This document shows, one piece after another, positions 1-62,977 of a DNA stretch of 64,000 bases. The DNA is from Lepidodermella squamata. Lineage: Eukaryota > Animalia > Gastrotricha. The number at the start of each line of letters is the position of its first letter. Positions within the stretch are counted from its first letter, which is position 1. The stretch covers positions 1,240,001-1,304,000 of the forward strand of contig JBLDXI010000003.1 in assembly GCA_047495785.1 (NCBI GenBank). The letters are read 5' to 3'. A model generated the notes under the pieces. It was not told the origin of the DNA and did not search any database. It saw only the letters and a program-made list of their open reading frames with translations. The translations under genes were made by a program, and so were the position numbers.

Positions 1-223
1 CAACGTTCAAAACAGGGCTGGTCTTTCTCCATTAATGATTGCGGCGAGATATGGTTACCTTGAAATTTTAGAGATGCTCCTTCAAGTTAGAAGTATCAAC
101 CTAGCGGCCAAGGATACCTATGGCTTCACAGCTACAGACTTTGCGTTTCAGTTCAAAAACTACGAAGCAGCCGGTCTTTTGACGATGTTTGAGGTCAGAA
201 ATTCGGCGAAGAAGGACGCGTGA
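1..223 (+). CDS. 3' end of an ankyrin-repeat gene (last two repeats); probably another CCP-ankyrin cluster member, truncated by the window edge
   Basis: GLSPLMIAARYGYLEILEMLLQVRSINLAAKDTYGFTA.. aligns with repeats 6-7 of the downstream paralogs. TGA at 221-223 and AATAAA at 315-320. Confidence 0.8.
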   Translation, partial: NVQNRAGLSPLMIAARYGYLEILEMLLQVRSINLAAKDTYGFTATDFAFQFKNYEAAGLLTMFEVRNSAKKDA

Positions 224-514
224 GCTGATTACTGATAATTATCTTTAAAACTCGTTGTATTTTTTTGTAAATCTTTCGTCGTCGCTCATTCTGCTCGCTG
301 ATATGAAGAAAAAAAATAAAAGGCACGTCGAGCAAGTTGACCAACACTAGTAGTTGAATACTTTTAACAAGTTAGTTTATGGTCACGTATGAAGGTTCTG
401 CTGCTACTGCTGGCCAGGCTCTTGGATTAATAGCATTACGCATAGGCACCTGTGATATCACGATGTAGTTTCTCGCTAGCCTAGAGAATTATTTACACGA
501 CCGACGTGTTTATC

Positions 515-2517
515 ATGATGCTTGTCGTCCTAACCACAATTTTACTATTTGCACTATCAAATGCCGTTGAATTTTGCCCGCGGCAAATCAACATCTTCAA
601 CGGCAATGTCGATTTCAGTGACGGCCGACCTAATCCTGTCGGAATTCGGCGACCTCTACTATGCTCGAAAGGTTTTATATCCCTTGGCCAACCTTACGTC
701 GAATGCACATCTGACGGCTGGTTCGTACCAGGAAATTGCATAAATCGAAGTAAGATTTTAAAAACCTCACAGGACGACTTTATCGTGATTTTCTTTTAGC
801 TTCATTTAGATGCCGGAGATCTGACGGATCATTACCTAAAATCGCATTTTGGGACAGCCCAGAATGGGTTGATGATTATTGGTTCGTAAGGCGTTCTTTC
901 AACTGTGTTGCTAATTACACCCTGAAAGGATTAAGCTATTACGAATGTGACGAAAATCAGAGAGCTCAATGGAAGGCAAGGGGATTCTGCGAGCTTACCG
1001 AAAATCAACTGACAGTCAAAAAAATCGTGCCAATGTGTTCCGATCTGGCGATGAATTTCCTTCCAAACGCGAATTTCACGGGAAATGCGATTCTAGCTCC
1101 GGCTGGGTATTACACAAGATTTTTCCGCTGTAATCCCGACTATTACCTATTTGGAAGCTCCCCGACTGCGTTGTGCAATCCAAATGAGAAGAGAAGTGAA
1201 TACTCTGGTTGGAAAATTCTTGGATCATGTCGACAAGGTTTGATTTATAATCCATCAATTTTTGGCTTAATTTTCTTGTTTTCAGATCCGATGAATTTCC
1301 CAACATGCCCCGAACCTATAATCGAAAATGGGCAAGTTCGAGTAGGAGCGAACACATTCTCCTCCCGCCGCTTCTTCCGCTGCGCTGCTGGCTATGAATT
1401 GCTTGGCGTCAACCACATTATTTGCACTCTAAATGGAACTTGGTTCACCGCAGGAGGCTGTGTACCAGTTGGACAGACAACTATGTTCCCAGCTACAACA
1501 ATTGCCGCCACTACCACGATAAATTATCCTTCTATTTTCGAGTTCGTGTCATTTCGCTCCCGTGCGCTGTCTAATACTAGTTCGCAGCTACCGTATTTTC
1601 GAAACAGCACTACAACTATGCAACCTAGCGTTGCCAGGATAACTATTCAACTAAAGACGACACTCAGGCCGAGAACAACAATGGGAGATTCTCCATTTCA
1701 AGCAATCACTCGGCGCAGGTCAACAACAGTTGCCCCCACTCAAGGAATCCCCCAAGGAATCATGAGATCAACTCAGGGGCAACTAAACACATGTATTTGT
1801 GGAGAAATCAACTCGCCAGACCTGGTCGCAGCAGCGAAATATGGAAACATTCAAACAGTTCAGTATCTCTTATCAAACGGGGCAAGTTACAATTCCGTTG
1901 ACGAAGCAAATCAAACGGCGCTACATGCTGCAATTCGAAATAACCAACAGCGAGTTGTTGAGATTTTCATGTCATGCGTTGAATGCATCAACCTCGAGGC
2001 TAGAGCTAATGACGGCGCGAACACTTTAATGGCCTTATCCAAAAGCAACGATTCATTGCCTGCTCTTGAGTATCTGTTGGCCAAAGGCGGCTTCGATCTC
2101 AACTCTGCGAACCGAAACGGCTCAACTGCTCTTCACATGGCTGCCGAGAATGGCAATATAGGAGCTTTGAGGATTCTCGTTGCCTCTGGGGCTAATTTGA
2201 ACAAATTAGACCATAAAGGAAATACGCCACTGCTAAACGCTGTTAGGAGTGGGTCGTTAGATTCAGTTCGGATTCTTCTCATGGGAACGGCGAATGTCAA
2301 CTTGAGTAGCAATAACGGCACATCGCCATTGATGGAAGCTGCTAGACTTGGTAATACAGATATTGTTAGGATGCTACTACGGCACCCGAGAATTAATCTC
2401 GATATCGTGGACAGTAAAGGCAATACAGCTGAAATGTTGGCCTACGCTAACAGGAACTTGGACGCTGGTCTGTTAATTCAAGAGAAACGCGAAAAAATGA
2501 AATTGAACTCAAATTAA
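515..2517 (+). CDS. Secreted Sushi/CCP(x4)-Thr-rich linker-ankyrin(x7) protein (cluster gene 1); exons 515-749, 800-1237, 1286-2517
   Basis: Hydrophobic N-terminus MMLVVLTTILLFALSNA. Four C..C..GY..G...C...W...GxC modules and seven GxT(A/P)LxxA ankyrin repeats. Two phase-1 GT-AG introns of ~50 nt; AATAAA ~2570. Confidence 0.85.
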
Positions 2518-2704
2518 ACTAATTAACTTATTTTGTATTAAAATCATTCACATGTTTTTGCAACGGAAAAATAAAAGATTAAAGCCGCGCACTGCTGCTA
2601 TTTTGGCTATTACCACCGCAAAACATAAATACGGATTATAGCGATAAGCTGATATAAAATTTTGCGCATGCTCGTCTCAAATGTCAACATTTGTTTAAAC
2701 CACA

Positions 2705-4567
2705 ATGCTACTCACAGCGATAATAATTGGTACCTTTGCTTGTGCGACATCCGCACAAATTTCTGAGGGCAATGTTTGCGCCAATGAACTTTCCATCTAC
2801 AATGGATACGTTGACTTCAGTGATGGCAAGGTGAATCGAATCGGTGTGTCTCGGGCAATCATCTGCAGGCCTGGCTTTATAAGCATGGGCTGGCCAATTG
2901 TTACTTGCGTCTCAACAGGATGGTCTGTGAGAGGAACATGCGTTAACCGAGGTGAGATATTTTCAATCTTTAGTTCCCAACCATTAGTATTCTAACATTT
3001 CAAGCTATGCTAAAATGCCCAAGCTCGGACTATGCACTGGCTTCGAATGCGTATTTCACCGAACCAGAGTGGGCGGATGAAGAATGGGTGCTGAGGCGAT
3101 CATTTGCTTGCGGACAAGGCTACGAACTTCGCGGGTCAAGCTTTTACGAATGTTCCGATGACGACCATCAACCGCAGTGGGTGGCTAGAGGGTTCTGCGA
3201 AATGGCTACCAACAACCGCGAGCCGACTACAGATGACCTGTGGCAATGCTCTGAATTCGCATCGGATGGCTTAGTGAAAAATGGAGAATTCCCTGTCGAA
3301 TCGCGTTCAGCCCCTGCAGGATATCTCGTCCGCGATTTCCGGTGTTTACCGGGTTACTTCGCGACTGGATGGGCTCAGATTGCTGTTTGCAACCCAGCTG
3401 AACGCAGGGAAAGATACTCTGGCTGGAAAGTACTCGGCGGCTGCACTATGCGTAATTATTAATCCATTGAACATTAATTCTTTTATTTTTCCATTCTGAA
3501 TAGGTCAAATCATTTTTCCAAACTGTGGCACGCCGTTGGTCGAGAACGGCAAAGTAGAGCCAGGAGAAGAAACACCCGGAGCAACGCGGACGTATCGATG
3601 TAACAAGGGCTACAAAAGGATGGGTGCTGATCAGTTAATCTGTTCTGTCGATGGGACCTGGTTCACCTCAGGAATTTGCATACCTTCACCAAGTGATATC
3701 GATCAAGTATCCACTGTTGCAAGTTTAAAACTAACAACTAAACGAAGGAAGAGGCCTACAACGCGAACTACAATCAGACGAACTACAAGAAAGCCGACTA
3801 CAACTCAACAGAAATGTAAATGTGGCTCGAGGAATTCGAAAGATCTCGTATTAGCGGCTGAATCTGGCAGTGTTAGGAAGGTCCAATACTTCCTTAATAA
3901 GGGCATCAGTTACAATTCAAGAGACTCTGCAAATCGATCAGTACTCCTGGCAGCTTGCGAGAATGAACAGAGCGAAGTCATTAAAGTTCTGTTCAAATGC
4001 ATCGAATGCATTGACGTTAACTACGCTGATTCAAATGGAATAACTGCTCTAATGCATCTAGCTAAATCTAATCGAACAGTTGAGCACATTCAAAATTTGA
4101 TTACGCAAGGGGTTAACGTGAATGCTGCGAGTAAAAATGGCTCAACAGCTCTCCATTTTGCGGCTAGTTCTGGGAGTTACGTCGCTATTCGTCTTCTTCT
4201 CATGTCCGGAGCTTGGCCTAACAAAATGGACCATGGAGGCAATTCGCCTCTGATCTACGCCGTCACAGGCCGATTTTCCGAGGCAGTTAAAGTTATAATC
4301 AACGGTAAAGGAAACGTGAATCTATCAAATAATACTGGATTTTCGCCGCTCATGGTTGCGGCAAAACTTGGCTATTTAGAAATCGCGAATATTCTACTAG
4401 GTCAGCCGAAAATTCTGCTGGATATTGTTGATAGGGACGGAAATACGGCCGAGAAACTGGCTTATTCGATGGGGCTATTTGAAATTGTCAGTCAAATTCG
4501 ATTAAGGCGGAAACAAAATGATACAGAGTCTGAAAAGGATTCCAGACTACACAGATTCGGAACCTGA
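2705..4567 (+). CDS. Secreted CCP(x4)-basic/Thr linker-ankyrin(x7) protein (gene 2, close paralog of gene 1); exons 2705-2951, 3005-3451, 3504-4567
   Basis: Signal peptide MLLTAIIIGTFACATSA. Same exon structure and same CCP inserts as gene 1 (NPAERRERYSGW vs NPNEKRSEYSGW). Splices keep the frame; AATAAA ~4590. Confidence 0.85.
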
Positions 4568-4708
4568 ATTATTGTTTTGCTTTATTGTAAATAAACGTTT
4601 GGATTCTTTGCACTCTTTTTAAACGCCCACTTATTTGAGTGTGTTAAGCATTAAGTTTACACGGCTTCCACTCACTGTTGTCCACAGTCCGGCATCAGGC
4701 CTGAAAAA

Positions 4709-5828
4709 ATGTATACAGGCTTCTTTGTTTTGCTAGCTGCTGTTAGCTCGAGTAAGTTTTACACGCAAAATTCTAAAATCTGACAAATCTCTCCTCTAGT
4801 TGCCGTTTTTGATGTCGAACGGTCTGGAAAATGTACTCCAGAGCCGTACGGGCTTGAAAACGCGAATTTTACTGAATTCGGTTGGGAGACCAATGGAACA
4901 GTGTGGAAAAAATTTGAATGTGATCGTGGCTACGCCATAAGCGGCCAGCCATTTATTAGATGCGATCCTAACAACGGAACAGGCCGATGGGAGCTCCAAG
5001 GGAATTGTGTTGCCGGTACGCGTTAACAAATTTCTGTATAACTGTATAAACTCAAGTGATATGAAGGTTCTTTCGCGAAGAATTGTGGCGCAGATCCGAA
5101 AATCGACTACGCTTTTGTGTACCCTGGATCCTCTGCAGTAGGTTCAGTTCGCTACTTCTCCTGCGATGCTGGCCTTCGAGTCGTTGGGGAGCCGACTGTC
5201 ACATGTGGAAGCGAAGGCCGCTGGAGGTCCTGGGGGACATGTCAAGTGGGAAGTAAGTCTTGCATCACGAAAAGGATTGATTCGATCAATCTATTTCACA
5301 GCTGACCCTCCTCAACGCTGCGAACGCTATGCTAGACTCCTTAACGCTATTGTCGATCAAAGCAGTGGCGCCCTGGTCGGTACTACCCGGTATTTCACAT
5401 GCGCCCCTGGTTACTACCTTGTCGGACGCAATTCGATAACGTGCCGCTCGCCTGGTTACTGGGACCCAGCTGGCGACTGTCGTAAAGGCTGTGGGGAGCC
5501 TGCCTCTATCGAAAATGGCGGTTTTGGCTACGGCCAGTCTGATACGAATGCAGCGAGAAAGGTGTACTGTTTCGACGGATACCAATACAATGGTTTGACT
5601 TCGATGATTGGATGTCGTGAAGACGGAACTTGGAGCGAGTTGGATGGTTCTTGCGAGCCAACTATCGAGTATGTTGATCCGGTGTGGGGAATGGTTAATG
5701 CTAGGTTACAAATGGCGACAACGCGAGAACCTCCTCGCCCAACCCCCACGCTAAGAAGGATCATTCTTGGAGCTGCAGCAGTTACGAGAAACGATGTCAC
5801 CACGCCTCATCTAGATCAAATGGGATGA
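4709..5828 (+). CDS. Secreted CCP(x4)-only protein (gene 3); 4 exons ~4709-4751, 4800-5015, 5067-~5252, 5302-5828
   Basis: MYTGFFVLLAAVSS|IA signal peptide is split by an intron. Four CCP modules and a Pro/Thr/Arg tail, with no ankyrin. AATAAA ~5864. Confidence 0.8.
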
Positions 5829-6295
5829 ATTATGGACTAAATGAATTGCAGTTAAAAATGAGCAATAAATGGGAATTTTTAATTTCCATCGAAATTATGA
5901 TTTTTTGCTGCTTAATTTTCATCATTCAGAAGAACATTTCACTTGAATTCCGAGTGTTAGTAAAATCTAAGACGCCCACATCTAAGTGCAATATTTCAAT
6001 CTTACTACAAGATTGAAGTTGGTCATCTCAAAACCTGCCCGCTAATACGTGGAAACGCCAATTGTGCTTGCGAATACTACAAGACCACGTTTAAGTGTAA
6101 TTTGTGTTGTTTTTTCATGGTGGTCACTCTCTCGCGTCAAGCAGCCAAGTATGAGTTGGACAAAAAGATGAGTTTATGTTGTTGGCCGCTCAACATGAAA
6201 AGCAGGCTTGTAATTAAGCCAATGATGTAGTTACTATCAATGTTAATATAAAAACAAATTAATGACTGTTGTTGATGTGAGATTACACGACGGTG

Positions 6296-8410
6296 ATGAT
6301 TCTAGAAATCTTAAGCATCGCGGTAGCAGTACTTACCATTCAAGCGCAGCCGAACGCAAGCCCTTGCGTCCTGGTTCCGGTTGTTGAGAATGGCTACGTT
6401 GATTTGGCTGGTAACCCAAATGTGGTAGTAGGCGAAACGCGCATCGTGCGCTGTAACTTGGATGCTAGTTATGTCATATTCGGCAGCACTCGCGTCTTCT
6501 GTACCGAGAATGGATGGACCCAACCTGGTAGATGCATCCGGGGTCAAAGTAAGCATAAACATCAGGGAACCTTTTTTGATCCGCAATTTTAACATCGGGG
6601 AAAATCTTTAAATAGGTTACTAAAGCTTACTGAACCTTTTCCCCAATAATTTTCTTAAAGATTGCATTTTCTGACCTATTTTCCCTGCATAGTATCGTTA
6701 AGCCGGCAATGTCGACCGTTATTGGGACAAGAAGTTCCTAATGCTTACTACACGTCAGAAGAGTACCAGAACACAAACGGCGCCCAGCAACGACTGTTCG
6801 CCTGCAAAGATGGCTACAAGTTGAAAAATATGGGCCTAATCCTCTGCCAATGGGATCCGATGGCCAACGTAGCTGTATGGAAAGCTTTCGGAACCTGTGA
6901 ATTGCGTATGGCAAGGAAAATTCTGAATCTCTTATTTTCTAACCAAATTTGTTTTCCAGCTGCTAAGAACGCAAATAAAGACTGCTCAGAACCCTCGCTA
7001 CCTAACGGCAGGGTCTTCACTGGAACGAATGAAGACGGTGTCATAAGAGGCTTCACGTGCCTTCCCGGTTTTACTCTGACCGGCTCGGCATTAATAACCT
7101 GTAGCAACGGGACTTGGGTTGCTACGGGGGAGTGTTTAAGCCCTCTTGAAAACGATGTATCGCTTCGACCATCTCGAACCACTGTCTTCACATTTCCAAC
7201 ATTTCCGACTTCGACAGAGTTTCCAACTTTCCCTCCACGGCCTGCTACAACAACACCAGTACCAACGGTGTTCTTCATCACAGTTCCGATGTTTTCCACC
7301 CCATCAACGCGCCCGTTTACTATGAACACGGATTTCATCCCCCTTCGGTGCCCAGATAACCCGATGACTCCGAATGCCATCATAAAACCGGGTGGAAATC
7401 TTCCTGGGGACATGCGCCTGTTTGACTGCCGTGATGGCTACGTGTTGACTGGCAGGGGAAGGCTGGTTTGCAGTCGATCCGGCGTTTGGTTACCAGATGG
7501 AGATTGTTCGGCTCCAAGTATGTTGTCACATCAAAAGCAAATTCAAGTGAAAAGTTATTTTTGAAATAGGCTTCTCGTTTTTAACGCCAAAACCTGGCAC
7601 TCAACGTAAGTTTAACACAGCGGAAAGAATGCATTATATTTGATTATTCTTTCAGTTACAACATGGCGGAATACAATTGGGACCGAAGAATTTCCAGCAG
7701 ACTGCAAATGTTTTGGCCGGCAAAACTCTCCGGACCTAATTCAGGCCGTGAAGACGGGTAATTTGGCGAGGGTGGACCAACTACTCTCCGTGGGTGATGC
7801 AGATCCAAATTCTGTTATAGCTGGTTGGACCGCCTTAATGGTGGCATGTGACAACGCGAATGGCGTCATTCTCGATAGGCTCCTTGAATGCGGGTCTTGC
7901 CTAGAGGTCGACAAGAAAAACGAGGCTGGAACTACAGCGTTGATGTTCGCGGCAACAGATGAAGATTTCTCGTTTGGCGCCGGTAAACTACTGACAGCAG
8001 GCGCGAAAGTTAACGAACGCGACGGCTTAGGAACAACTGCTCTATCACTTGCAGCTCAATACGGACGAACTGAAACTGTTAGGACTTTGATAAGATATGC
8101 TGCGAACATCAACGTGGTCGACAATTTTTCAAACACTCCCCTTCTTTACGCAACAGCTGGGAATCATACAAGCACGGTCAGGCTACTGCTTTTCGCTGGA
8201 GCGGATGTTAATGCGAGAAATGCAAGAGGCAGTACGGCTATGATGATAGCTGCTCGTTGGGGCTACATTGAAATTGTCGGAGCGCTACTGAATTTCAATC
8301 CGAATTTGTACATAGCCGATAGTGATGGCAAAACAGCATTGCGTATCGCAGAAAGCTACGGCCAAACAAGGATCGCTCAGATTCTCAGAAACAGCATGAC
8401 CTCTGCTTAG
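6296..8410 (+). CDS. Secreted CCP(x4)-ankyrin(x7) protein (gene 4); exons ~6296-6548, 6693-6905, 6960-7517, 7570-7605, 7656-8410
   Basis: Signal peptide MILEILSIAVAVLTIQA. Three CCPs, an FPT-rich linker, a fourth CCP, then CKC..NSPDL and seven ankyrin repeats. Phase-1 introns; AATAAA ~8435. Confidence 0.85.
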
Positions 8411-8519
8411 TATTTTTGTATCAGTTTTGTTAGAAATAAAAGCGGATTAGCTACTCAGATTAACGTGATACAAGCGGTGAAAGCCTCATCACGTTATCTT
8501 CTTTTAACATCTTTAACAA

Positions 8520-9904
8520 ATGTATTCAACTTTGGTTATCATTTGCGTTTCCTTCTTCATTCCGGTAAAGCTTCAAAGTATTCCCGCGGGTAGGCTAAAT
8601 TAGGATTTGCTGCCAACTGGTTATACTTGCCATTATTTCAAGCCAAGAACTGCTACCCCTTAGCCAATGTTCCAAATGGCGTGATGGGACCTGGTAGTAA
8701 CGAAATCGGGGCCGAGAGGAACATTACGTGCAACAAAGGCTATGTTTTGGTGGGCCCTCCGAAAATCATTTGTTCCACGGCAGGGAAATGGTATATGAGA
8801 TGCCGATGCATGCCAGGTAGACTGATTTCTCAGAATTCTTCAACCTCGTATTGATTTTCGAAAATAGCCAATCTTACACGATGCGGCCGTCCTCTATCGG
8901 TGGATGGTGGGACCTATCGAATATCAGCAGACAATACCTCTGTTTACCTCGATTGCAATGCCGGCTATCGAATCACGCGACCTTCTATTTTAAAATGTGA
9001 GCAGACTGGATTTTGGTCAAGGCCCCAAGGCTTCTGTATACCAAATGACGCCCCAACTGCTGTAACTTCAACTGTTAATCCTAACAAGTGTTGCGCAGGT
9101 AGCAGGTCGAATTCCTTGGCTCTAGTCCAAGCAGCAAGAGCTGGAAATATCACTTTGGTGGATAGAATTTTGCTAACGGGAAATGCCTCTGCTAACTCGA
9201 GAGATGCCAACGGATGGACAGCTTTAATGTGGGCTGCGAATAATCGACATAGAAATGTAGCCAATCGACTGTTACAATGCTGTGCTGATCCAAATCTGAA
9301 AAGCTACTCGAACACTACGGCTCTAATGTTAGCCGTAAAGAGTGGAAGTTCAGAGATAGTCAAGGCCTTACTATCAAAGAAAGCGGATACAAACGTGGCA
9401 AATCAGTATGGCTCGACTGCTGCCCTTTTTGCTGCTCAAATTGGTGATTTGGATGCTTTAACGCTTCTTCTAAATAACGGAGCCGATGTGTCAGCAAGGG
9501 ATATCAGCAACAATACTATGTTGCACACAGCTGTTCGGGGGAACCATATTGATATAGTCAAGTTTTTACTCCGGATGAAGGAAATTGACGTAAATGCTGT
9601 TAATAACGATGGGATATCACCTCTAATGCTAGCTGCTAATTCTGGCTTTACGACTGTTGTGACGCATCTACTTGAAGTTGAGGGGATCGACCTATTCCTC
9701 GGCGATAATGAGGGCCGAACTGCAAGGACATTGGCGGAGGAAAAAGGCCACTCGGAAATTGTTTCGCTGTTGGAAGATGCTGAGAATGGATTCGAAGTAA
9801 ACATGATGACTGAAATAATTGAATCGACGACTTCGACCCTTACTAAACTCACAGCGAAGACCGCAGGTACAACAGAGTCCGATGCATCGTTCGGTCTACC
9901 TTGA
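8520..9904 (+). CDS. Secreted CCP(x2)-ankyrin(x7) protein with Thr-rich tail (gene 5); exons ~8520-8589, 8643-8816, 8868-9904
   Basis: MYSTLVIICVSFFIP N-terminus, two CCPs, then KCCAG..NSLAL and seven ankyrin repeats. AATAAA ~9952. Confidence 0.8.
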
Positions 9905-10403
9905 GCACTATTTGGAAAAAAATTATTAGATTACTTTTGATTGTTTAGAAAAATAAAAACAACAGTCGCGTTCGTTTGATTTCACGTTTCACTGCCGGAT
10001 GGTTTATTCGAACTAAAGATAAAGCAAGAGTTAGCGTCCTTCATATCTGCACTCCGACCTTTGAATCCCTTAGGCCGCTGTGTTATGGGATCTAGGGTCC
10101 ATTCGCACCAGTTATGAGTAAGGTTTGTTGCAGAGAATATTCAGTTACTCATTCACAGAATGAAAAAATAGTAGCCTAAACACGTCTGTCGACGTAAAAA
10201 GTAGTGAAATTCCCCGTTATACTTTTTTCCAACGGCTGACGTGCCTTGTGATATTGCACGCCTACGTTCGACTTGGTGACTCATTCGAGGACCGTGACGT
10301 GTTTAGTAGCCCTACGCAACACGAATCAAGGGCTCTAAATAGCCTTCGAAATTCAGGCCTAACCATTCAGTTCTGAAATACTTGAAAGCAAATAACAACA
10401 ACA

Positions 10404-10874
10404 ATGCAGTTTGTTCTTCTTACTTTGGCCCTGGTGGCTGTTCTACCTAGTACTCTATGCTTATCCTGTGATCAACTCCCGTTGGCAAAACACGGTTTCT
10501 TCATAGTGCCACTCAATGGGATGCCATCTGATGATGTACCAGATTTCCGAGTCCACTCAGCCATTCTAGTCTGTAATGCTGGATATAAACTGGTTGGTGA
10601 ATCTTTGATCAAATGCATGGACAACAATGAATTCAGTCAAATTGGTCAATGCATCCCTGGCCCTTGTGGCGAACCGCCTGTTATAGCGAAAGGCAACATT
10701 TTCTTCGATGGTGATAGCAAGCCCGAAGAAAGAGTCTCTATCTACTGTGATGACGGCTATTCTTTGGCTGGCAACGCGTTTTCCAGCTGTGACGCCCTGA
10801 CAAAGAAATGGAGCGAACCCGGAAAGTGCTTGCCAGATCCATCGGCAACTCCAAGAAAGCCTTACTTTTCATGA
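10404..10874 (+). CDS. Small intronless secreted CCP(x2) protein (gene 6)
   Basis: Signal peptide MQFVLLTLALVAVLPSTLC and two CCP modules in a single ORF. AATAAA ~10912. Confidence 0.85.
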   Translation: MQFVLLTLALVAVLPSTLCLSCDQLPLAKHGFFIVPLNGMPSDDVPDFRVHSAILVCNAGYKLVGESLIKCMDNNEFSQIGQCIPGPCGEPPVIAKGNIFFDGDSKPEERVSIYCDDGYSLAGNAFSSCDALTKKWSEPGKCLPDPSATPRKPYFS

Positions 10875-11573
10875 TTCCTGAACATGAGCAGTTCAATGCT
10901 TGATTTTTCCTAATAAATTGTGAATATTTTTGAAAGGATTGGTTATTTAAAAATTAAACTTGTATAGAAATTTTATCAATTTTCATGGTAGTGTTTGTAG
11001 TAGTAGAACTTGGGTAGAAAGTAGGTAAAAGTTGCTAATGTTAAACATTTCAGTCTCAGGTCTCAGCGTAACTTTCTTTAGGTAAAACTTAGAAGGTATT
11101 TGCCTTGTTTCTATTTATGTTTGGAGATACTTTGTCTACATAAATATTTCCCCTTACTAAAGTGTAATGAATAAGATGTGCGGCTTAGTGTCTCAACTAG
11201 TACCGCTCTCTAGCAGTATTATATACAATTTATACCCGCAAACACGCGCGCACTCTATTCTGCGGCATCGCTTTGCACTAAGAATTGTAATATACAAGTA
11301 TTAAGTATAACACATAACGTGTGTCTATTCACGGCCGTTTTTCCACTGTACACGCGCGGCCAGCCGGGCGCTTTGAGTTCCATTCACCTCAATGCTTTAC
11401 CTATCAATTGACACCACAACGACAACAACAATAACAATAAACATTTTATGACTTAAGGTGGCCATTCTAGGCCGCCTATTGATATACGAGAGCCTTATTA
11501 TGCGAATACCACTCCTGAAAAAATATTAAAACTTTGATAAATTATTTTAATTGATTTATCTTAGATCAAAATA

Positions 11574-14401
11574 ATGGATATTTTTCGGATTTTCATTGTT
11601 TTGGTTGGAGCTAATTTTGTGAGTGCTGAGAGCCTTGAGCACCATGAGCATCGTATGCGGGTTGTTAAATCGATGTCTTTTGACGACGAAGGTAAGAATT
11701 ACCGCTGTTCAAGTGATATTATCGCGATTTCCTCCTAGGCCCACTTCCACCGTCCTGTGGAGCCCTGCCTGAGGTCGACAATGGCTATTTCGTGAGAGGA
11801 TGGGGCTTTCACGTCGGCCACATTCGCTTTATTAAGTGCTTCGATGGTTACGAGCTTGAGGGCCCTTCGAATACAATGTGCCGCTGGACTGGCTGGACGC
11901 TCCCCGGTAAATGCGTCAAGCCATTACCAGAAAAGTGCATGTTAGAGCCGCGTGTACCGAACGCTCGTGTTTCAACTGGCCAAAATTGGGTCGGCTCAAG
12001 GCGCGAGTTTGACTGTTTGATCGGCTACAAATTGGACGGCTTCGCTGGGGTGGTCTGCGATGCTTTCGGCCGGTGGATAGCTATGGGAGACTGCATACCT
12101 CGTAAATTTGCCTTTGCTCGTTTCTATTCTTTCATGTTTTCGTCTTTTTAGTTTTCCCTGTTACTACAACGAGGCGGCCGGGTGATTTACCAGGTTACAG
12201 AAACTGCGTGGACACTTGATGATTTTACTGCACTGCTTTGATGACATCACTTGCAATTTTTTAAGATGCAATCAACAATTGTTAGCCGCGTGATTTTTCC
12301 AATAAAAACTGCTGAACATTAATTTTTGAAATCTACAGCGAATAGCACATCGTTATCCAATGCGACGGAGGCGGGAAATGTGACGAGGCTGTTACCTCCT
12401 GGACTTCTGGCTAGAACCGTCACGCCAACCATTAGAAGTCCAATCACTACTACTACATCAAGAACTGATCTTGGGAATCAAACAATAACTCTTAATCGAA
12501 ATAGCACTGAAGTTCCGCGAATCGCTCAGAACTCAACAACACAGCGACCATTCACAAATGCGACGTTAACCCCCACAAGGATTGCAACTGGCAACGCTTC
12601 TTTGCCTTCAACTTTGAAACCACTGGTTGTTACAACATCAAATGCGATAGCCATAACAACTCCGGCTTTACGTTCAAATCAAAATTCAACAAGTTTAATC
12701 AGCACAACTACTCCAAGAACATTTTCGAACGTTTCGATCGCGTTCATTGCCCCAAATGTTACCTTGCCACTGAGCCCGAGAGGATTCACCACTGTTACTT
12801 TACCTTCTCGCCTAACGAATGAAACTTTGCTCATCACGACTGTGAAACCTGCGATGAATGCTACGACTCGAATTGTTTCGACAAACAGGACGGACATTCC
12901 TGGCCCTGCCAACTCGACATTGGCGAGAATGACCACCGCGAGTCCTGGTAATTCGAGTAGGAATCAGTCACTTTCTGTGGATATAACAACAAACAAGCCC
13001 GAAACCACGACGGAAATTTCAGCTCGGACATTGACCAGCATTTCGACAAGAAGTGACTCTGCGACAACGACTTCCAGGGCGATTACGCAGTTATCATCGT
13101 TCAATACTACAGCACGGCAAAATTCAACAGGTCCAGCAAAAAATCTGCCCCGGCCAACTTCGCCATCGTTCATTGGGAATTTGACGCAAGCTAATGTGAC
13201 TACAGTTCGTCCAACGAAAGGTAAAGGCTACTAACTCGAAGTTATCCAACATTTTGAAACCTTGCACGCATAAACCCGGAACAACCATAATACATGCTTT
13301 AATGTTAACTTTAACTCAACAGTAACAGTAACAGTAACCACATCACGACCTTTACCCAGCTTGCCAATTTTCATCATTCGAAGGACTACAACAGCGCGAG
13401 AAACAAGCACGATCGCAAGTGATTTAAACCAAGGTATTGCTTTTAACGCTGATAACGTTCAAAAAATGAGAGTTACTAACATTTCATCGCTTAGAACTCC
13501 GAAACAGTCTAAATTTATAATGTATATTCACAGTGAAAAAATTGGGAGGCTCAGAGAATCGGGAAATTAAGTTTGTTGGAACGAAAGATATTGGATCCGT
13601 AAAACAAAATAAGTCAGCCAACTCAAAATGCTGCGGGATTTACCCCAAAGTGCAATCTTGGCGCTTGGTCGAAGCTGCTAGAGTAGGGAACGTTTCAGTG
13701 CTCACTGAACTTCTCGACTATGACGCTGATCCGAATACGAACGAAACCTCTGGCGGATGGACAGCTTTACAGGTGAGCGAAAAGCTAGATTCCTAAATCA
13801 TTTGAGACTGATGATTCTCTGGCAGTGGGCAGCTAACAACGGCCGTGTTGAAATAATGCGGGAGCTGCTAAAGTGTTGCGCCGATCCCGACTATCAGAAC
13901 ATCGCTGGCTCGACTGCACTCATGTTTGCTGTACGCAGCGGAATTTTCGACTCTGGCGATGTGCTTATCAAATCTGGCGCCCATGTCAACATCGCCAACA
14001 ACCTCGGCTCGACCGCAATTCACTTTGCCGCCCAAAGCGGTCAGCCAGAGATTGCTGCTTTGCTCCTTGAGAGTGGCGCGAATGTTAATCAGGTCGACAA
14101 AGATGGAAATACTGCGTTGATTTGGGCGGCGAGGACGAATAATCTGCGAACTGTTCGAGTGCTATTAGCTAGGTCTGGTATCGATGTTAATTGGGCCAAT
14201 ACCAAGAAAATGACGGCATTAATGGCGGCGGCTCGTGGTGGCTTTAGCGATATTGTTGAAGCTCTCCTTCTCGAAGGAGCCGAGACAGATTCAAAGGACG
14301 AAAATGGCTACACTGCTCTTGCGTTGGCTAAACTTTACAATAAAAGCAACACTGTCAAGCTACTTGAAAATCCGAAATCTCAGTACTTTTTATTTGATTG
14401 A
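11574..14401 (+). CDS. Secreted CCP(x2)-long mucin-like stalk-ankyrin(x7) protein (gene 7); ~7 exons
   Basis: MDIFRIFIVLVGANFVSA signal peptide and two CCPs (~11740-12100). A ~300-aa Thr/Ser/Asn-rich exon (12339-13220), then KCCG and ankyrins with an intron at 13773-13825 (GWTALQ|WAANN). AATAAA ~14424. Confidence 0.8.
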
Positions 14402-15695
14402 ATTGATAAAAACGAACATGACGAATAAAAGTTATTTACATTGACCCTCAGCTTTGATCGAACCTTTTATTTTGTTGTTTCCTTTCATCATTGTAGGTCC
14501 AGAAATTTGGAGAGATCAGCTCAAGTATCCGAAAGTTTTGTATCGGAATAAGATTCAACGTTGAAGCAAATATATCTGACTATTATCTTGTTATTATGCT
14601 TGGTTTTATCGGTTTTCAGGGCGAGAGGCCGGCTCTTGGCGTTCATTCCTGTTCAAGTATCATCGTGAAATTTCGGCAACCGTGCATCGTCCAGGCCACT
14701 GTGATGTGGCCATAGGCTGACTTTCGATGACATCGATTCAGGTTCCATGCCGGAAATCACCTGCAAAAGAGAAACATGCTTTGTAATTGGGAATCCCTGT
14801 GACCTGTGGCTCTAATTGGGCCCTTTGTTGTATATATCATATATTTAAAACCAACATTCATGGTTTTGAAAAGGCCTTCAGAACGAACAGTCCCAGAAAA
14901 ATTGAAGAAGAGAAATCAAAGATACTCTTTTGCGTTGGAGGCGCTGGAGATTTGTTGAAGAGCAAAAGTTCTGCTCTCCAGCATCTCTCCAACTTCCAGC
15001 GATAACAATTCTCCCAGCCTCCTGTTCAACTGTATACTACAGCTTAAATGCTGTTAGAAGCCAGTAGCCAGCGTAGAAACTGATGTAAAATTAATGTCTA
15101 CGGAAGCCAGATTTGAATATTTCCGCTTTTGTTGTAGGTTACCTAGAAGGGGTAGTGTATGCATTATTTGTATGCAATATTTGGACATATTCCAGTCACT
15201 AGCACATTTGATTTCCCAAGCACTCAAATTGCTTAATTACACAAGTGAAGAATACAGTGTACGCAAGTTGACTGCGAAAAAAGTCATTTGTTTGTATTAG
15301 AAAGCATCCTAAATTACGTTCAAATCTCATCAACACCTGGATAGCAAATTTTAGCGTATTATTTTGCTAAACTTAGGGCTTAAGGCTTAGGGTTAACAAA
15401 GATGCGTCTATTATGACGGCGCCTATTAGCGGAGGAGTGCCGACTTTGCTCACGTCGAATTCGTATGCATTTTAATGATAGAGCCTGTCATGCTCATAAT
15501 AACACAGGGCTCGGGGATCCTGCATCAACAAGCCGGTGTGCAAGCGGGCGCTCGAGACCAGCATCAAGATGGTCTTTTCACTCGTGGCAGGCCAGTGCGC
15601 AAGCATCTATTGTATTAGTTGACCGTGATGATGGAAAAACATAATAGTCAACTTTTTTGTATCAGCGCCGCCGTAGTGCGCGTTGGCGATGGCAA

Positions 15696-25000: not shown

Positions 25001-28000
25001 TTGAGAAAGCCTAGTTGCCACTGTTATGAATATTGGCTTGTGCTTGCAGCTGACAAATCAGAATACGGACGGAAATGGCTGGCCGAAATTAAACGATTGC
25101 AACGCCATGAAATACGCAATGGTGCCTTGTTATCATCCGATCCCGGGTCCTGGCTACTATCAATATGTACCGGGTTTCGATCATTTATCTGGATGTGCGG
25201 GTGGAGATTACAAGATTGGCTCGGCTGTATATTACGAGGGTGTTAAAACGCGAACCGTATGGGTTTCAGGATCTGAATTCGATGCAATCGATGCGGTTGT
25301 GGCAGCGGTATGTGGCTCACTCAAACCTAACTTTAATCACGCACTAAAAAGCGGCCTTGAAAAACCAGTCGCCGCCTTTTTATGCGTTGCGGTGTCGTTG
25401 AAAATAGTCAACAGCAATTTGCACGAAATCATTTGTGGTATTTGCCCCAGGTTAAGCACGTGAGATGCAAAGTTACCACCCCTTCGGATACCCCTTACTG
25501 CCGACCGAAGCTTGACGGAGGGGAACTAATTCCACAGGGTGCTGCTGCGTGCTTCACCGATGAAACACAGGTATGAAGGTTCAAAATGAATGAATTTTTT
25601 GAATTGGCATCTTTTATTTATTTTTTTAACAGCTCAGTGGCGGAGTTTTCGCAACCCGCTCTGATTGCGTAGCGGCTCTATACGTAAACCTTTCGAAGAC
25701 GCACATCAATTCCTTACATATTTTTTGCGCGCATTTAACAGCAACTCAAACAGTGCTACACAGCGCTGGCAGTGGGTGAGTTCGCATTGCCAGCGCACCA
25801 TTTGTCAAAGTTTTCATGCCCATTTTCAGGCGCTAGTACGACCAAATGGTACTCCACATCATTGGTTCACGACGCACAAAGCGGTGGAGCAACATGCAGT
25901 GGATCGGATATATACGGAGTAAATCCCACATAACACCTTAAACGGCAAAGACGGTATTTGATGAAGGGAGAAGGGAGGGCGCTGAAGTTTAATCATGCTT
26001 TTCAACCAGAACCACTTCAAGTAGGACTAAATCTTATATGTCAGTTCCTTGATCTTTCGGTATTTCTCTTTAGCAAAAGATGGCATTAGGCTAAATCTTT
26101 TGTATGGGCTATGCACTGGCTAAAACTGAATTAAGTTGGGCTGCACCACTATAGTCAGCGCCCAAGTAAACAGAGAACAGGGATGAATGAGTGGCAGAGA
26201 GCATTATTATTCATCTATATGGGCTTGTTTGTTCACTATTTTAACATTATGCAACTTTTTCAAGCCTAGTCTTTGACGTTTATCAAAGCACGAGCTAGAA
26301 AACAAAAATGTGGATCTTCTCTTTGAATCCCCGTTCAATCTGATTTCAATGAACGCATGAACATCTAAGCGGCTAAATAAGCTATGGTTTCTCTTAAGGT
26401 AACAGGCGTAGTTGGCAGCTCGTCGCTTACGTTGCCGGCTGGCACGGATCCATACGATACCATGACGGTAGCTCACAAGCGTTGCCGTACCGCTTCCTCC
26501 CCTACGCTCATCTGCCGTCCACAATTAACCGGCGCACCAGCCCTCTCAGGCTGTGCATTTTCGGAATCAGCCGTAAGTCAATGCATATCGCTAAATTTCG
26601 CTATTTCAAAACAATTCTTTTTCATAGCTGCCTGCTACAAGTGATAGCGCGATTAACACCATAACAAAATGTGACAGCAAGAAATACGAAAGCAAGATGT
26701 GTTACGATTCCGCTGACCTGACTTCAACCCACCTGAGATGCATAGCTGACTACGATTGTCCAACTACGTCTAGAAATGTAAAAATGAACGATGCTATTTT
26801 ATTAATTCATTTCATTTTTCTCAGCTGATTTCGCCAAATTCAGCTGCTAATTCGCAATCAAATGCAGACAGCGCATGTGCTAGCAGTTCGAGCGCAGTAA
26901 GTTGAGATTTATGAACATCTGAGTGACTATTGCTTCTCGAAAATAGCCGAAATTTGTACGCTGCCGACGCCCTGCGGTCTCCACCTTGGCATTCTGCCGC
27001 CCGGTTTCAGACGGCTGCATTGTCTCGTCAAGCGAAATCAGAGTAAAATCACTACATAAAGACCAAGAGTTGAATCAAACTATGTTTTTCCCAGCTTACG
27101 CCCTACGATGCAAGCGGTTTGAGTTACTCAGATTGCACTGATTACGAGGTGAAGCAACTGCTCAGCTCATTTATATCAGGCTGGGTCAATTTAAATGAAT
27201 CTAACACTATCTTGTTTCGCACAGGCTCTAATTGTGTGCTACGATCAAAGCGCTGTCTACAATTACCTCCCAATAGTTGGTGGCGTCAATACAAATCCAT
27301 TTGCTTGTACTGACGATTTTGCTACGTGTGGAGCGAAAATCCAAGTATATCCTAACTATTTCGATCCGGAGAAAATCAATTGAGATTGCTTTCAGCTGCC
27401 GATGGCATCGATTTACGCGGGCGCAGCATCGGGAGACTGCGCTACTAACATAGCAAATTCAGCAGCGTGGTCTGTAACTGTTGGTAAATGGATTCGCTGT
27501 CTGAAACCGTCGACGTCAGCACCCAGTGTTTCATGGGTTATTTGCCGACCGAGGTTGCAGTACAACCCTAATTGCGAAGCTGGTGAAACTCCGGTAGGTT
27601 TATCGCCAGTACTTATCAATTGTCAGCGATTCGTAAATGATCATCCCAACATAGGAAGCTCCTGTGACTGGTGGTTACGCCTCAGTAGATGCTTGCCTCA
27701 GTGCCGCAACTGGTGTAAGGCGTTTCCATTACTCAGATTTTCGCTTCATCCAGCTTGTAACCTTCCTTTAGGCCAAGTGCTGCTGCGGTGCAGGTACTGG
27801 AGTCCTTTCCGGAACTTACAATTCCGCCGATGGTACTTGCTCTTGCGGTGGTGGTTCTTCGGTGAGCGCCCGACCCTTGGATAAAATATTATTGTAACAG
27901 TATATCTTTGTCTAGTCCCGTAAAGGCGAATTCTTTTCATCGTCTTGCACGACGACATGCGGTTCAACGAACTGTCCAGATGCGGCTGAGAAAACACCTC

Positions 28001-40400: not shown

Positions 40401-42251
40401 CGATTTTGTTGACGTCGCCATATTTATTAACAAGCTCTAAATTTCTTCCAAACTGTCTTCAGTGAAAGTTGGAAAGCCGCGCAGTTGATTTTTGATTCTG
40501 ATTTAATTAACGCCGGCTTAACTGTCTTGATTTTTTTCAAGGTAACCGATGTTGTAGGAAACACTGCCGCTTCTTTGCCCGCTGGGACAACGGGATATCC
40601 GACACTGACCGTCGCCCACAAACGCTGCAAGCTGACTGGCTCAGACACAATTGTATGCCGTCCTCAACTAACTAAAACGCCTAACCTCGTTAACTGTCCT
40701 TACGCAACTGACACCCTGGTAAGAGAATGATTAATGCGGAAGAACTGATTGGATTAAAAAGTTTACTATATAGCTGCCGGCTGTTAACGATGCCGATATG
40801 ACTACTTTGGATAGCTGTAACGCGCGGAGATACGTCAGTCAAATGTGTTACGATGCCGCTGATCTGACGGCGGGACATTTGATGTGCAAAGCCGACTACA
40901 CCTGCTCGGCTAAAAATGTAAATACATAATAATGACTTGCGATGTTGCTTGATAACTATTTGCTTTTCCAGCTGATTTCTCCGTCAGCTACCGACAGTAG
41001 CCAAGGCGACGCCAATGCTGCATGCGCCGCTAACGACGGCGTAAGTTGCCATTGATCAATTAGAAGCGCAATCAAACTTCTTCATTTCATAATATAGCCG
41101 AGATTCGTTCGCTGCCGTCGAACTTCTATAACAGCAACGGCATTTTGCCGCCCCATCTCGGATGGCTGCATCGTGTCAACCTCACCAGCGATAAGTGAAG
41201 TCAGAGTAAGTAATGCCTAGAATGAAGATTTTTGGTTGAATTAATTAATTAATTGATTGATTAATTTCCCGATAGCTATCGCCATACACTTCCGGCGGTG
41301 TGAATTACGCTACTTGCACGGGATACGGCGTGAGTAGCCACTAATTATTTAAAGCAAGAATATATTATGTTTCCATATTTTGTTTCGTAAACTCGGCAGG
41401 CGAGAATTGTCTGTTACAATCCTACCGTCCGCTACCAATACTTGCCAGGCCTGCCTAATTACAATTCGAATCCTTACACATGCGAAAATGACTTCGCCAC
41501 ATGTGGATCAAACATTCAAGTGAGTTTCTATATCTAAATCGAGCAGAATCGCATTTAATAATAATTTATCAGGTACCTATGACTTACATCTTCGCCTCCC
41601 CTGTCGCCGCATCAGCTTTAGGCGTCTGCCAAAGCGCTATACATAATGAAGCTGCTTTTTCACCTGCCGTCGGCAACTTCATCCGTTGTCTAAAACCTAT
41701 TACTGGCAGTACCTTATCCTGGATTATGTGTCGGCCAATGCTGCAATATGCCTCATGTCCGAGTGACGAAACCTTGGTGAGTAATCCTATATATAATCTA
41801 AAGATAAATAATAATAATACAAATGGAAATGATAACGTCCGCTCGATGTTACGTAGGACATGGCCAACCTGCCGGCGGGAGCAAATTCTTGGACTTCTAC
41901 TCAAGCGTGTATTGCTGGAGGAGCAATTGCAGTAAGTCATTTTGCTTTCCCTTTTCTCAGTTACAACGTGAGTGAATTTTCATAGGGGAAATGCTGCTGC
42001 ACTGATCCGAGTAATCCGAGCGTTAACACTGGCGGAATTCTAACCGGCACTTATGGCATATATGGTGCGTGCTCTTGCGGTGGTGGCACATCTACGGTAA
42101 TTGTTGAAAGTCTACGATTCATCTTGATGATAGCACGCTTTTTCAGGCCCGTCCTGGAGAATATTTCTCGTGCAGCGGCGGCGGTGCTTGTGCTACAACC
42201 GCCTGCCCGACATCGGCCAGCGCTCCAGTACTTCCAATCCTTGCCGAGTGA
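31413..42251 (+). CDS. Giant secreted cysteine-rich repeat protein B (paralog of A)
   Basis: MKAALLLVIG|LLVEGSWSC start; exon-for-exon colinear with A. Ends ARPGEYFSCSGGGACATTACP..AE, TGA 42249-42251; AATAAA ~42400. Confidence 0.8.
37754..37918. mobile_element. Palindromic (foldback) MITE in an intron of gene B
   Basis: 67-bp perfect inverted arms (37754-37820 / 37852-37918) with a 4-bp direct repeat TGAT on both flanks. Confidence 0.8.

Positions 42252-57472: not shown

Positions 57473-62977
<5,505 letters not shown>

What the first reader, a model, noticed from the sequence alone, without database searches (positions are those of the whole stretch)
1792..13879. Co-varying four-cysteine clamp on every ankyrin domain
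Seen: each ankyrin domain has a Cys pair just before repeat 1 and a second pair at the end of repeat 2, and their spacing co-varies. CxC goes with CxxC in gene 1 (CIC 1792 / CVEC 1975), gene 2 (CKC 3815 / CIEC 3998) and gene 4 (CKC 7703 / CGSC 7889). CC goes with CC in gene 5 (9089 / 9278) and gene 7 (13629 / 13874). These are essentially the only cysteines in the domains. Inference: two disulfides staple the N-cap to repeat 2, adapting the ankyrin fold to an oxidising extracellular space. A Cys4 metal or redox site is the alternative.
Basis: partly seen in the sequence, partly recalled or inferred. Interest (0 to 1): 0.8.

Follow-up and report, generated by a model that had tools for sequence, protein, structure and literature searches.

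The report
Four-cysteine cap on secreted ankyrin domains
Five neighbouring animal genes encode exported proteins whose ankyrin-repeat domains each carry two conserved cysteine pairs that probably form two disulfide bridges tying the N-terminal strap to repeat 2, but the bridges could not be measured here.

Summary
All ten cysteine motifs sit at the stated coordinates. Every complete ankyrin (ANK) domain in the window has a Cys pair 8-11 residues before helix 1 of repeat 1. Each has a second pair just after the outer helix of repeat 2. Genes 1, 2 and 4 carry CxC with CxxC; genes 5 and 7 carry CC with CC. Genes 2 and 4 also have one extra helix cysteine. None of the 315 nearest ANK proteins from a 5.8-billion-protein collection shows this pattern.

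The proteins look secreted:
- Each has a signal peptide, Sushi modules and a Thr-rich stalk, and none has a membrane segment.
- Genes 5 and 7 are transcribed and spliced.

AlphaFold models (pLDDT 95) give canonical seven-repeat ANK domains. Order begins at the first Cys pair, on a non-canonical path.

Two limits remain. The tools expose no coordinates, so Cys-Cys distances were not measured. The co-variation amounts to only one or two evolutionary events.

A two-disulfide N-cap staple is the best reading (about 0.55). A Cys4 metal site is unlikely. Earlier scan notes describe the same family elsewhere in this genome.

The parts
506..2517 (+). Gene 1: signal-peptide exon (506-799), then Sushi x2, a Thr-rich linker and the ANK domain (ORF 1027-2517)
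   Evidence: ORFs; Pfam Sushi and Ank; hydrophobic N-terminus only
1792..1800 (+). Gene 1, Cys pair 1 (CIC), before repeat 1
   Evidence: residues 16 and 18 of model m387a3a88b1ff
1975..1986 (+). Gene 1, Cys pair 2 (CVEC), after the outer helix of repeat 2
   Evidence: residues 77 and 80, after helix 68-75
2705..4567 (+). Gene 2: signal peptide, Sushi exons, and the ANK domain in ORF 3536-4567
3815..3823 (+). Gene 2, Cys pair 1 (CKC)
3998..4009 (+). Gene 2, Cys pair 2 (CIEC). An extra single Cys codon lies at 3956-3958.
6293..8410 (+). Gene 4: signal peptide, Sushi exons, and the ANK exon (ORF 7640-8410)
7703..7711 (+). Gene 4, Cys pair 1 (CKC)
7889..7900 (+). Gene 4, Cys pair 2 (CGSC). An extra single Cys codon lies at 7847-7849.
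8520..9904 (+). Gene 5: candidate signal-peptide exon (8520-8603), Sushi exon (8627-8854), and Sushi plus ANK ORF (8900-9904)
   Evidence: RNA-type contigs of run X2 cover 8800-9945
9089..9094 (+). Gene 5, Cys pair 1 (CC)
   Evidence: residues 16 and 17 of model mecdfcae5ba8c, inside the short helix 13-17
9278..9283 (+). Gene 5, Cys pair 2 (CC). It takes the place of the x-G of the LLxxGADxN consensus.
11574..14401 (+). Gene 7: candidate signal-peptide exon, Sushi exon, sequon-rich stalk exon (12326-13234), and an ANK domain in two exons (up to 13772, and from 13826)
   Evidence: introns ending at 12335 and spanning 13773-13825 are seen as GT..AG joints in run X2
13629..13634 (+). Gene 7, Cys pair 1 (CC)
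13773..13825 (+). Gene 7: 53-nt intron inside repeat 2, between the two Cys pairs
   Evidence: sequence; joint skipping 53 nt with GT..AG ends in run X2
13874..13879 (+). Gene 7, Cys pair 2 (CC)

Best explanation
Each gene encodes a secreted protein: signal peptide, Sushi/CCP modules, a glycosylated Thr-rich stalk, and a C-terminal seven-repeat ankyrin domain. In the oxidising secretory pathway the four conserved cysteines most likely form two disulfides. These would join a short N-terminal strap (Cys pair 1) to the loop that follows the outer helix of repeat 2 (Cys pair 2). That would enclose repeat 1, the N-terminal capping repeat, in a covalent loop. Terminal repeats are the part of an ANK stack that frays first, so this would stabilise the domain outside the cell.

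The first Cys of each pair holds a near-constant position. The second Cys lies at +2 and +3 (CxC with CxxC) or at +1 and +1 (CC with CC). The two segments therefore offer matched spacings.

Shown here: the motifs, their positions in the fold, the secretory architecture, transcription and splicing, and the absence of the pattern from ordinary ANK proteins. Inferred: that the thiols are oxidised, and which cysteine bonds to which.
For: - Motifs and coordinates are confirmed. They are conserved in 5 of 5 domains that share only 29-44% identity.
- The pattern is absent from the 315 nearest ANK proteins.
- The context is secretory: Pfam Sushi plus Ank; hydrophobic segments only at N-termini, with no membrane span; signal-like first exons for genes 5 and 7; sequons at 1.66 against 0.51 per 100 aa.
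- Each ANK domain carries four cysteines, or four plus one helix cysteine, so pairing within the domain is possible.
- The AF2 models have pLDDT 95.6 and 95.1. pLDDT rises from 56-62 (residues 1-10) to 81-83 (residues 11-20) at the Cys pair.
- Structural alignments to DARPins (Z 29.5, rmsd 1.3 A over 223 residues) and to long ankyrins start at model residues 19-24. The strap that carries the cysteines is therefore ordered but off the canonical repeat path.
- Both models show the same four isolated beta-bridges, at strap residue 21/22 and at consensus positions 28, 33 and 6 of the first loop. If 33 pairs with 6, as I recall from DSSP strings of ANK structures, the strap pairs with position 28 of repeat 1. 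That places it next to the top of the outer helices, where pair 2 sits. This step is inference.
- The CC/CC variant fits disulfides but not a single metal ion.
Against: - No Cys-Cys distance was measured, because model coordinates are not exposed.
- If the strap followed the canonical path of a missing 'repeat 0', pair 1 would lie about 20 A from pair 2. This is my geometric estimate from general ANK geometry.
- The beta-bridge partner assignment is inferred, not read from the model.
- The co-variation may be a single event. Only (g1,g2) is well supported (96/96). A g5+g7 clade is not rejected (p-AU 0.40).
- Genes 2 and 4 have an odd fifth cysteine.
- There are no protein-level data, and RNA coverage of genes 5 and 7 is low.
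Confidence: 0.55

Rival explanations
1. Each pair forms its own local disulfide (vicinal CC, CxC, CxxC), or acts as a redox-active motif. The N-terminal strap would not be tied to repeat 2.
For: The estimated canonical geometry would keep the pairs about 20 A apart. CxxC motifs often form local, redox-active disulfides (general knowledge). No distance was measured.
Against: Vicinal and CxC disulfides are rare and strained (general knowledge). In the gene 5 model the first CC lies in a short helix (13-17), which does not suit a vicinal bridge. Local bridges would explain neither why both pairs are always present together nor why both spacings change together.
Confidence: 0.15
2. The four cysteines bind one metal ion (a Cys4 zinc-type site) that holds the strap on repeat 2.
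For: CxC plus CxxC in genes 1, 2 and 4 resembles zinc-knuckle spacings (general knowledge).
Against: Genes 5 and 7 have CC plus CC, and adjacent cysteines rarely ligate the same ion. The proteins carry signal peptides and Sushi modules, a setting in which cysteines are normally oxidised. No zinc-finger family matched in Pfam.
Confidence: 0.07
3. Some or all of the cysteines form intermolecular bonds, giving covalent dimers or cross-links to a matrix or cuticle. Alternatively they are simply inherited, and the matched spacing is a historical accident on a single branch.
For: The tree allows one change of state (p-AU 0.40 for g5+g7). Two independent indels landing on the same branch of a five-tip tree is not very improbable (my estimate is roughly 0.15-0.3). 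Both pairs sit at the domain surface near the stalk.
Against: The pairs are strictly conserved across paralogues with 29-44% identity, while the rest of the domain is free of cysteine. The strap is ordered in both models. No mixed type occurs among the five.
Confidence: 0.2

Closest known systems
Designed ankyrin repeat proteins (DARPins) and consensus ANK domains, e.g. PDB 6moj and 6moi
   Same: Same fold, including an N-terminal capping repeat. Z 29.5, rmsd 1.3 A over 223 residues, 37% identity. Z 28.1 for the gene 1 model.
   Different: In the structural alignments, DARPin chains have no counterpart to the strap upstream of the N-cap: they start at model residue 19-21. DARPins are engineered proteins (general knowledge). 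The window proteins are natural, sit behind a signal peptide and Sushi modules, and add a cysteine-bearing strap.
Ankyrin-1 / Ankyrin-2 membrane-binding domains (PDB 7tw3, 4rlv)
   Same: Best sequence matches among solved structures (E 4e-76 and 2e-70). Canonical 33-residue repeats.
   Different: They are cytoplasmic adaptors with 24 repeats (general knowledge). In the printed part of the alignment, other residues align at the query's CC of pair 2, and no aligned stretch reaches pair 1.
Latrotoxins (PDB 9goa, 7ptx, 7pty)
   Same: ANK arrays in proteins that act outside the producing cell. They match the domain at E 1e-32 to 1e-52.
   Different: They are large pore-forming venom toxins with no Sushi modules. 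The match is to generic repeats. No four-cysteine cap on the ANK array is known to me.
Toxoplasma RON9 and its apicomplexan orthologues
   Same: Signal peptide, ankyrin repeats and a Sushi/CCP domain in one secretory-pathway protein (PMC3299665).
   Different: This is a protist rhoptry-neck protein with PEST repeats and a putative C-terminal membrane segment. ANK precedes Sushi. No sequence relationship was tested here, and no Cys cap is described.
Bacterial periplasmic or exported ankyrin proteins (e.g. AnkB next to catalase KatB)
   Same: ANK repeats exported from the cytoplasm. Many of the nearest database hits are bacterial ANK proteins with N-terminal signal-like segments. 'Periplasmic ankyrin' is a recurring term in the literature.
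   Different: Their cysteine content is about 0.75% and none has the two-pair pattern. They have no Sushi modules.

Membership tests
Ankyrin repeat superfamily (Pfam Ank, Ank_2 and related) | Sequence match above the curated cut-off | tested here: met
   Ank_2 scores 110-202 bits against a cut-off of 27.3 in all five domains.
Ankyrin repeat superfamily (Pfam Ank, Ank_2 and related) | Stack of helix-turn-helix repeats with connecting loops | tested here: met
   AF2 models have pLDDT 95 with 14 helices in seven pairs. Z is 28-29.5 to DARPins and ankyrins.
Sushi/CCP-domain secreted proteins | Sushi domains above the Pfam cut-off, a signal peptide, and no membrane span | tested here: met
   Sushi scores 22.8-55 bits against a cut-off of 20.7. 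Hydrophobic 19-mers occur only at the N-termini of first exons. No dedicated signal-peptide predictor was available.
Disulfide-stapled extracellular domain | Partner cysteines within bonding distance (C-alpha to C-alpha about 4.4-6.8 A) | not testable with these tools
   Structure prediction returns pLDDT and DSSP only, and no coordinate file appears in /data.
Disulfide-stapled extracellular domain | Even, conserved cysteine set in a protein routed through the secretory pathway | tested here: met
   Genes 1, 5 and 7 have four Cys per domain. Genes 2 and 4 have four plus one helix Cys. The secretory features are shown.
Disulfide-stapled extracellular domain | Oxidised thiols in the mature protein | not testable with these tools
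   This needs non-reducing mass spectrometry or a thiol assay.
Cys4 zinc-binding module | Ligand spacing compatible with one tetrahedral ion in all members | tested here: not met
   Genes 5 and 7 have CC plus CC. No zinc-finger Pfam family matched.
Co-evolving residue pairs (true co-variation) | Several independent, coordinated changes on a tree | tested here: inconclusive
   The ML tree needs two changes. A constrained tree needing one change is not rejected (p-AU 0.40). Only five sequences are available.

The most novel reading that the evidence does not exclude
A small animal has evolved a natural repertoire of extracellular DARPin-like binders. Ankyrin domains are displayed on Sushi and mucin-like stalks and made fit for the outside of the cell by a two-disulfide staple. 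The staple locks the N-terminal capping repeat, and its two halves change spacing together (CxC/CxxC or CC/CC). This would be a new structural solution for exporting a fold that otherwise works almost only inside cells. It might serve as a recognition or immune-type protein family.
Probability: 0.35. Interest if true: 0.75.

Novelty: new variant of a known kind. Interest (0 to 1): 0.55.

Why it matters
Ankyrin repeats are among the commonest protein-binding modules. In animals they are regarded as cytoplasmic or nuclear, and they normally lack structural disulfides. A natural, secreted, disulfide-capped ANK domain would show how a cytosolic repeat fold can be adapted to an oxidising, protease-rich environment. 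It would give protein engineers a ready-made N-cap staple for DARPin-type binders. It would also point to an unstudied family of extracellular recognition proteins in a poorly sampled animal lineage. If the cysteines prove to be free or metal-bound, the family is still an unusual Sushi-ANK fusion, but the structural point is lost.

Tried and rejected
1. Three word-index homologue searches returned only generic ANK proteins at 51% identity or less. The queries were the gene 1 ANK region, the gene 5 N-terminal module, and a profile of the five N-terminal modules. No hit had Sushi or the Cys pattern, and the window's own proteins are not in that collection. No further family members could be fetched, so the co-variation could not be tested beyond five domains.

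2. The exhaustive representative search was not run. In leave-one-out tests true paralogues score 58-84 bits against the family profile. Generic multi-repeat ANK proteins score 124-240 bits. The 150 rows returned would therefore be filled with generic proteins, and the cost was not justified.

3. The ESM Atlas feature search gave only CDK-inhibitor and gankyrin-type clusters.

4. None are provided.

5. I considered the idea that the N-terminal pair is a vestige of a 'repeat 0' copy of the same motif (KCCAG against QCCAD in gene 5). It does not fit the CxC/CxxC genes, and the strap is five residues too short for a canonical loop.

6. Literature searches for secreted or extracellular ankyrin proteins with disulfides found no description of such a family. 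The gastrotrich genome paper named by earlier scan notes does not mention ankyrin or Sushi.

7. The organism was not identified independently, because run and organism names are coded.
Full report
**What is in the window.** The first 14.4 kb hold a head-to-tail array of intron-containing genes on the + strand.
- Pfam finds Sushi/CCP domains followed by ankyrin repeats in five of them. Ank_2 scores 110-202 bits and Sushi 23-55 bits.
- A six-frame scan with a profile of the family finds exactly five complete ANK domains. They lie in ORFs 1027-2517, 3536-4567, 7640-8410 and 8900-9904, and in the split domain 13533-13772 plus 13826-14401.
- The same scan finds the C-terminal end of a sixth domain at 2-220, cut by the window edge.
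- Nothing like it occurs in the remaining 50 kb.

**Check of the observation.**
- ANK cysteine counts are 4 (gene 1), 5 (gene 2), 5 (gene 4), 4 (gene 5) and 4 (gene 7).
- The fifth cysteine of genes 2 and 4 lies in the same column, in helix 1 of repeat 2. Cysteine is common at that position in ordinary ANK repeats (general knowledge).
- In the alignment the first Cys of pair 2 always follows 'LLx' at the end of the outer helix of repeat 2. In the CC genes the pair replaces the x-G of the LLxxGADxN consensus. In the CxxC genes two residues are inserted.
- The first Cys of pair 1 lies 10-12 residues before the conserved Leu of helix 1, and the second Cys 8-11 residues before it.
- The domains share only 29-44% identity, so the strict retention of both pairs is not drift.
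- Among the 315 nearest ANK proteins none has such a two-pair pattern, and their mean Cys content is 0.75%.

**Are the domains really outside the cytosol?**
- Every gene starts with an exon whose only feature is a hydrophobic N-terminus. No other hydrophobic 19-mer exists in any exon, before or after the ANK domain.
- Between Sushi and ANK lie Thr-rich linkers. In gene 7 the linker is a 302-residue exon with 21 N-x-S/T sequons and no cysteine.
- Sequon density inside the ANK domains is 1.66 per 100 aa, against 0.51 in the generic hits. Composition may explain part of this.
- No KDEL-type or GPI-type C-terminus is visible.
- A 2015 run (X2) carries SMART-adapter and poly(A) loose ends, so it is RNA. 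Its contigs cover genes 5 and 7 at low depth. They show GT..AG joints that remove 12191-12335 and 13773-13825. The latter confirms the splice inside gene 7's repeat 2.
- The architecture is therefore transcribed and points to secretion. Secretion itself is inferred.

**Structure.** AF2 models of the gene 5 domain (window 9044-9799) and the gene 1 domain (1747-2514) were built on alignments of the paralogues plus 24 generic ANK segments. Mean pLDDT is 95.6 and 95.1.
- Both are seven-repeat ANK stacks. The best solved matches are DARPins (Z 29.5, rmsd 1.3 A over 223 residues; Z 28.1 for gene 1), followed by ankyrin-B/G, gankyrin, FEM1 and Notch.
- pLDDT is 56-62 for residues 1-10 and jumps to 81-83 for residues 11-20, the block that holds pair 1. 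It is 97-98 from residue 21. Order therefore begins at about the cysteines.
- All structural alignments begin at model residues 19-25. This includes alignments to long ankyrins that have further repeats upstream.
- The cysteine-bearing strap therefore does not follow the path of a canonical preceding repeat. It is also about five residues too short for that (my count against the consensus).
- Both models show the same four isolated beta-bridge residues. One is strap residue 21/22. The other three map to consensus positions 28, 33 and 6 of the loop between repeats 1 and 2.
- As I recall DSSP strings of ANK structures, 33 pairs with 6. If so, the strap pairs with position 28 of repeat 1, just after its outer helix. 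The cysteines 3-6 residues upstream would then lie within reach of pair 2 on the neighbouring outer helix, about 10 A away.
- If the strap instead paired near the loop tip, pair 1 would be about 20 A from pair 2 and the staple would fail.
This is the main gap.

**Co-variation.** The rule (CxC with CxxC, CC with CC) holds in 5 of 5 domains with no mixed type.
- A tree was built on the 176 columns after pair 2, which excludes the trait's own columns. Only (g1,g2) is supported (96/96).
- The ML tree joins g4 with g7 (76/84), which would need two changes of state. Forcing g5+g7 together costs 0.79 log-likelihood units (p-AU 0.40).
- In the N-terminal module g4 also shares GWTAL with g5 and g7, and ADPN with g7. 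The CxC/CxxC state therefore spans the deepest split and is probably ancestral.
- The data thus show one, perhaps two, coordinated changes. That is suggestive but not statistically meaningful.
- Mechanistically the match is sensible. Residues i and i+2 on an extended strap face one way, as do i and i+3 on a helical turn (DSSP shows a turn at 78-80 in gene 1).

**Weighing the mechanisms.** The Sushi modules have their own complete sets of four cysteines. Cysteine counts per exon are multiples of four apart from signal-peptide and split-domain cases. If oxidised, the four ANK cysteines must therefore pair among themselves or between molecules.
- Two inter-segment disulfides explain the joint conservation, the matched spacing and the ordered strap. 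They would lock the N-cap repeat, the least stable part of an ANK stack (general knowledge from DARPin cap engineering). I give this 0.55.
- Local intra-pair bridges (0.15) require rare, strained rings and explain no coupling.
- A Cys4 metal site (0.07) fits three genes but not CC/CC, and is unusual outside cells.
- Intermolecular links or historical accident take most of the rest.

**Comparison with what is known.** The fold is an ordinary ANK domain, and membership is met by sequence and structure. What differs is the context and the cap.
- Precedents for ANK outside the cytosol exist: latrotoxins, bacterial exported ANK proteins, and Toxoplasma RON9, which combines a signal peptide, ANK and Sushi (PMC3299665).
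- I found no description of a cysteine-capped ANK domain or of an animal Sushi-ANK family.
- Earlier notes of this scan report the same kind of cassette elsewhere in this genome (tens to about a hundred copies). They suggest a gastrotrich, Lepidodermella squamata. I did not verify either point. That species' genome paper does not mention ankyrin.
- I class the finding as a new variant of a known kind.

Gene 7's ANK domain is split by an intron.

Noticed in passing
window 10369-10935: Gene 6 is a separate short gene (signal peptide plus two Sushi domains, no ANK) with its own poly(A) end near 10926-10935. In the RNA-type run X2 its word depth is about 700-1600, against 2-9 for the flanking Sushi-ANK genes.
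   Followed up: partly
window 5166-5828: Gene 3 is a Sushi-only ORF (two Sushi hits, 8 Cys). No ANK domain lies downstream before the next gene's signal peptide at 6293, and no obvious signal segment lies in the ORF. It may be a truncated or decayed member.
   Followed up: no
window 2-220: The C-terminal end of another ANK domain is cut by the window edge, so the tandem array continues upstream.
   Followed up: no
window 12326-13234: The stalk exon of gene 7 has 302 residues, 34% Ser+Thr, 21 N-x-S/T sequons, no cysteine and no Pfam match. The upstream intron 12191-12335 is confirmed by an RNA joint.
   Followed up: partly
window 25026-25463 with 50098-50676, and 27402-27884 with 41501-41935: Two further pairs of paralogous cysteine-containing ORFs have no Pfam match. 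Local alignment scores are 115 and 149, with shared motifs such as NQN..G..W...CN...A..CY.P and IRCLKP....SW..CRP.LQY. They may be exons of another lineage-specific secreted family.
   Followed up: partly
window 57462-57850: A roughly 400-nt island of 55-72% G+C lies in a region of 24-39% G+C. It has long overlapping ORFs on both strands, rich in Arg, Pro and Ala. Its origin is unexplained.
   Followed up: no
window 8800-14500: The DNA run X1 shows two haplotype-like contig sets (depths of about 45 and about 60-100). Many substitutions and small indels occur in introns and exons. I did not check whether any touch the Cys codons, because only part of the table was shown.
   Followed up: no
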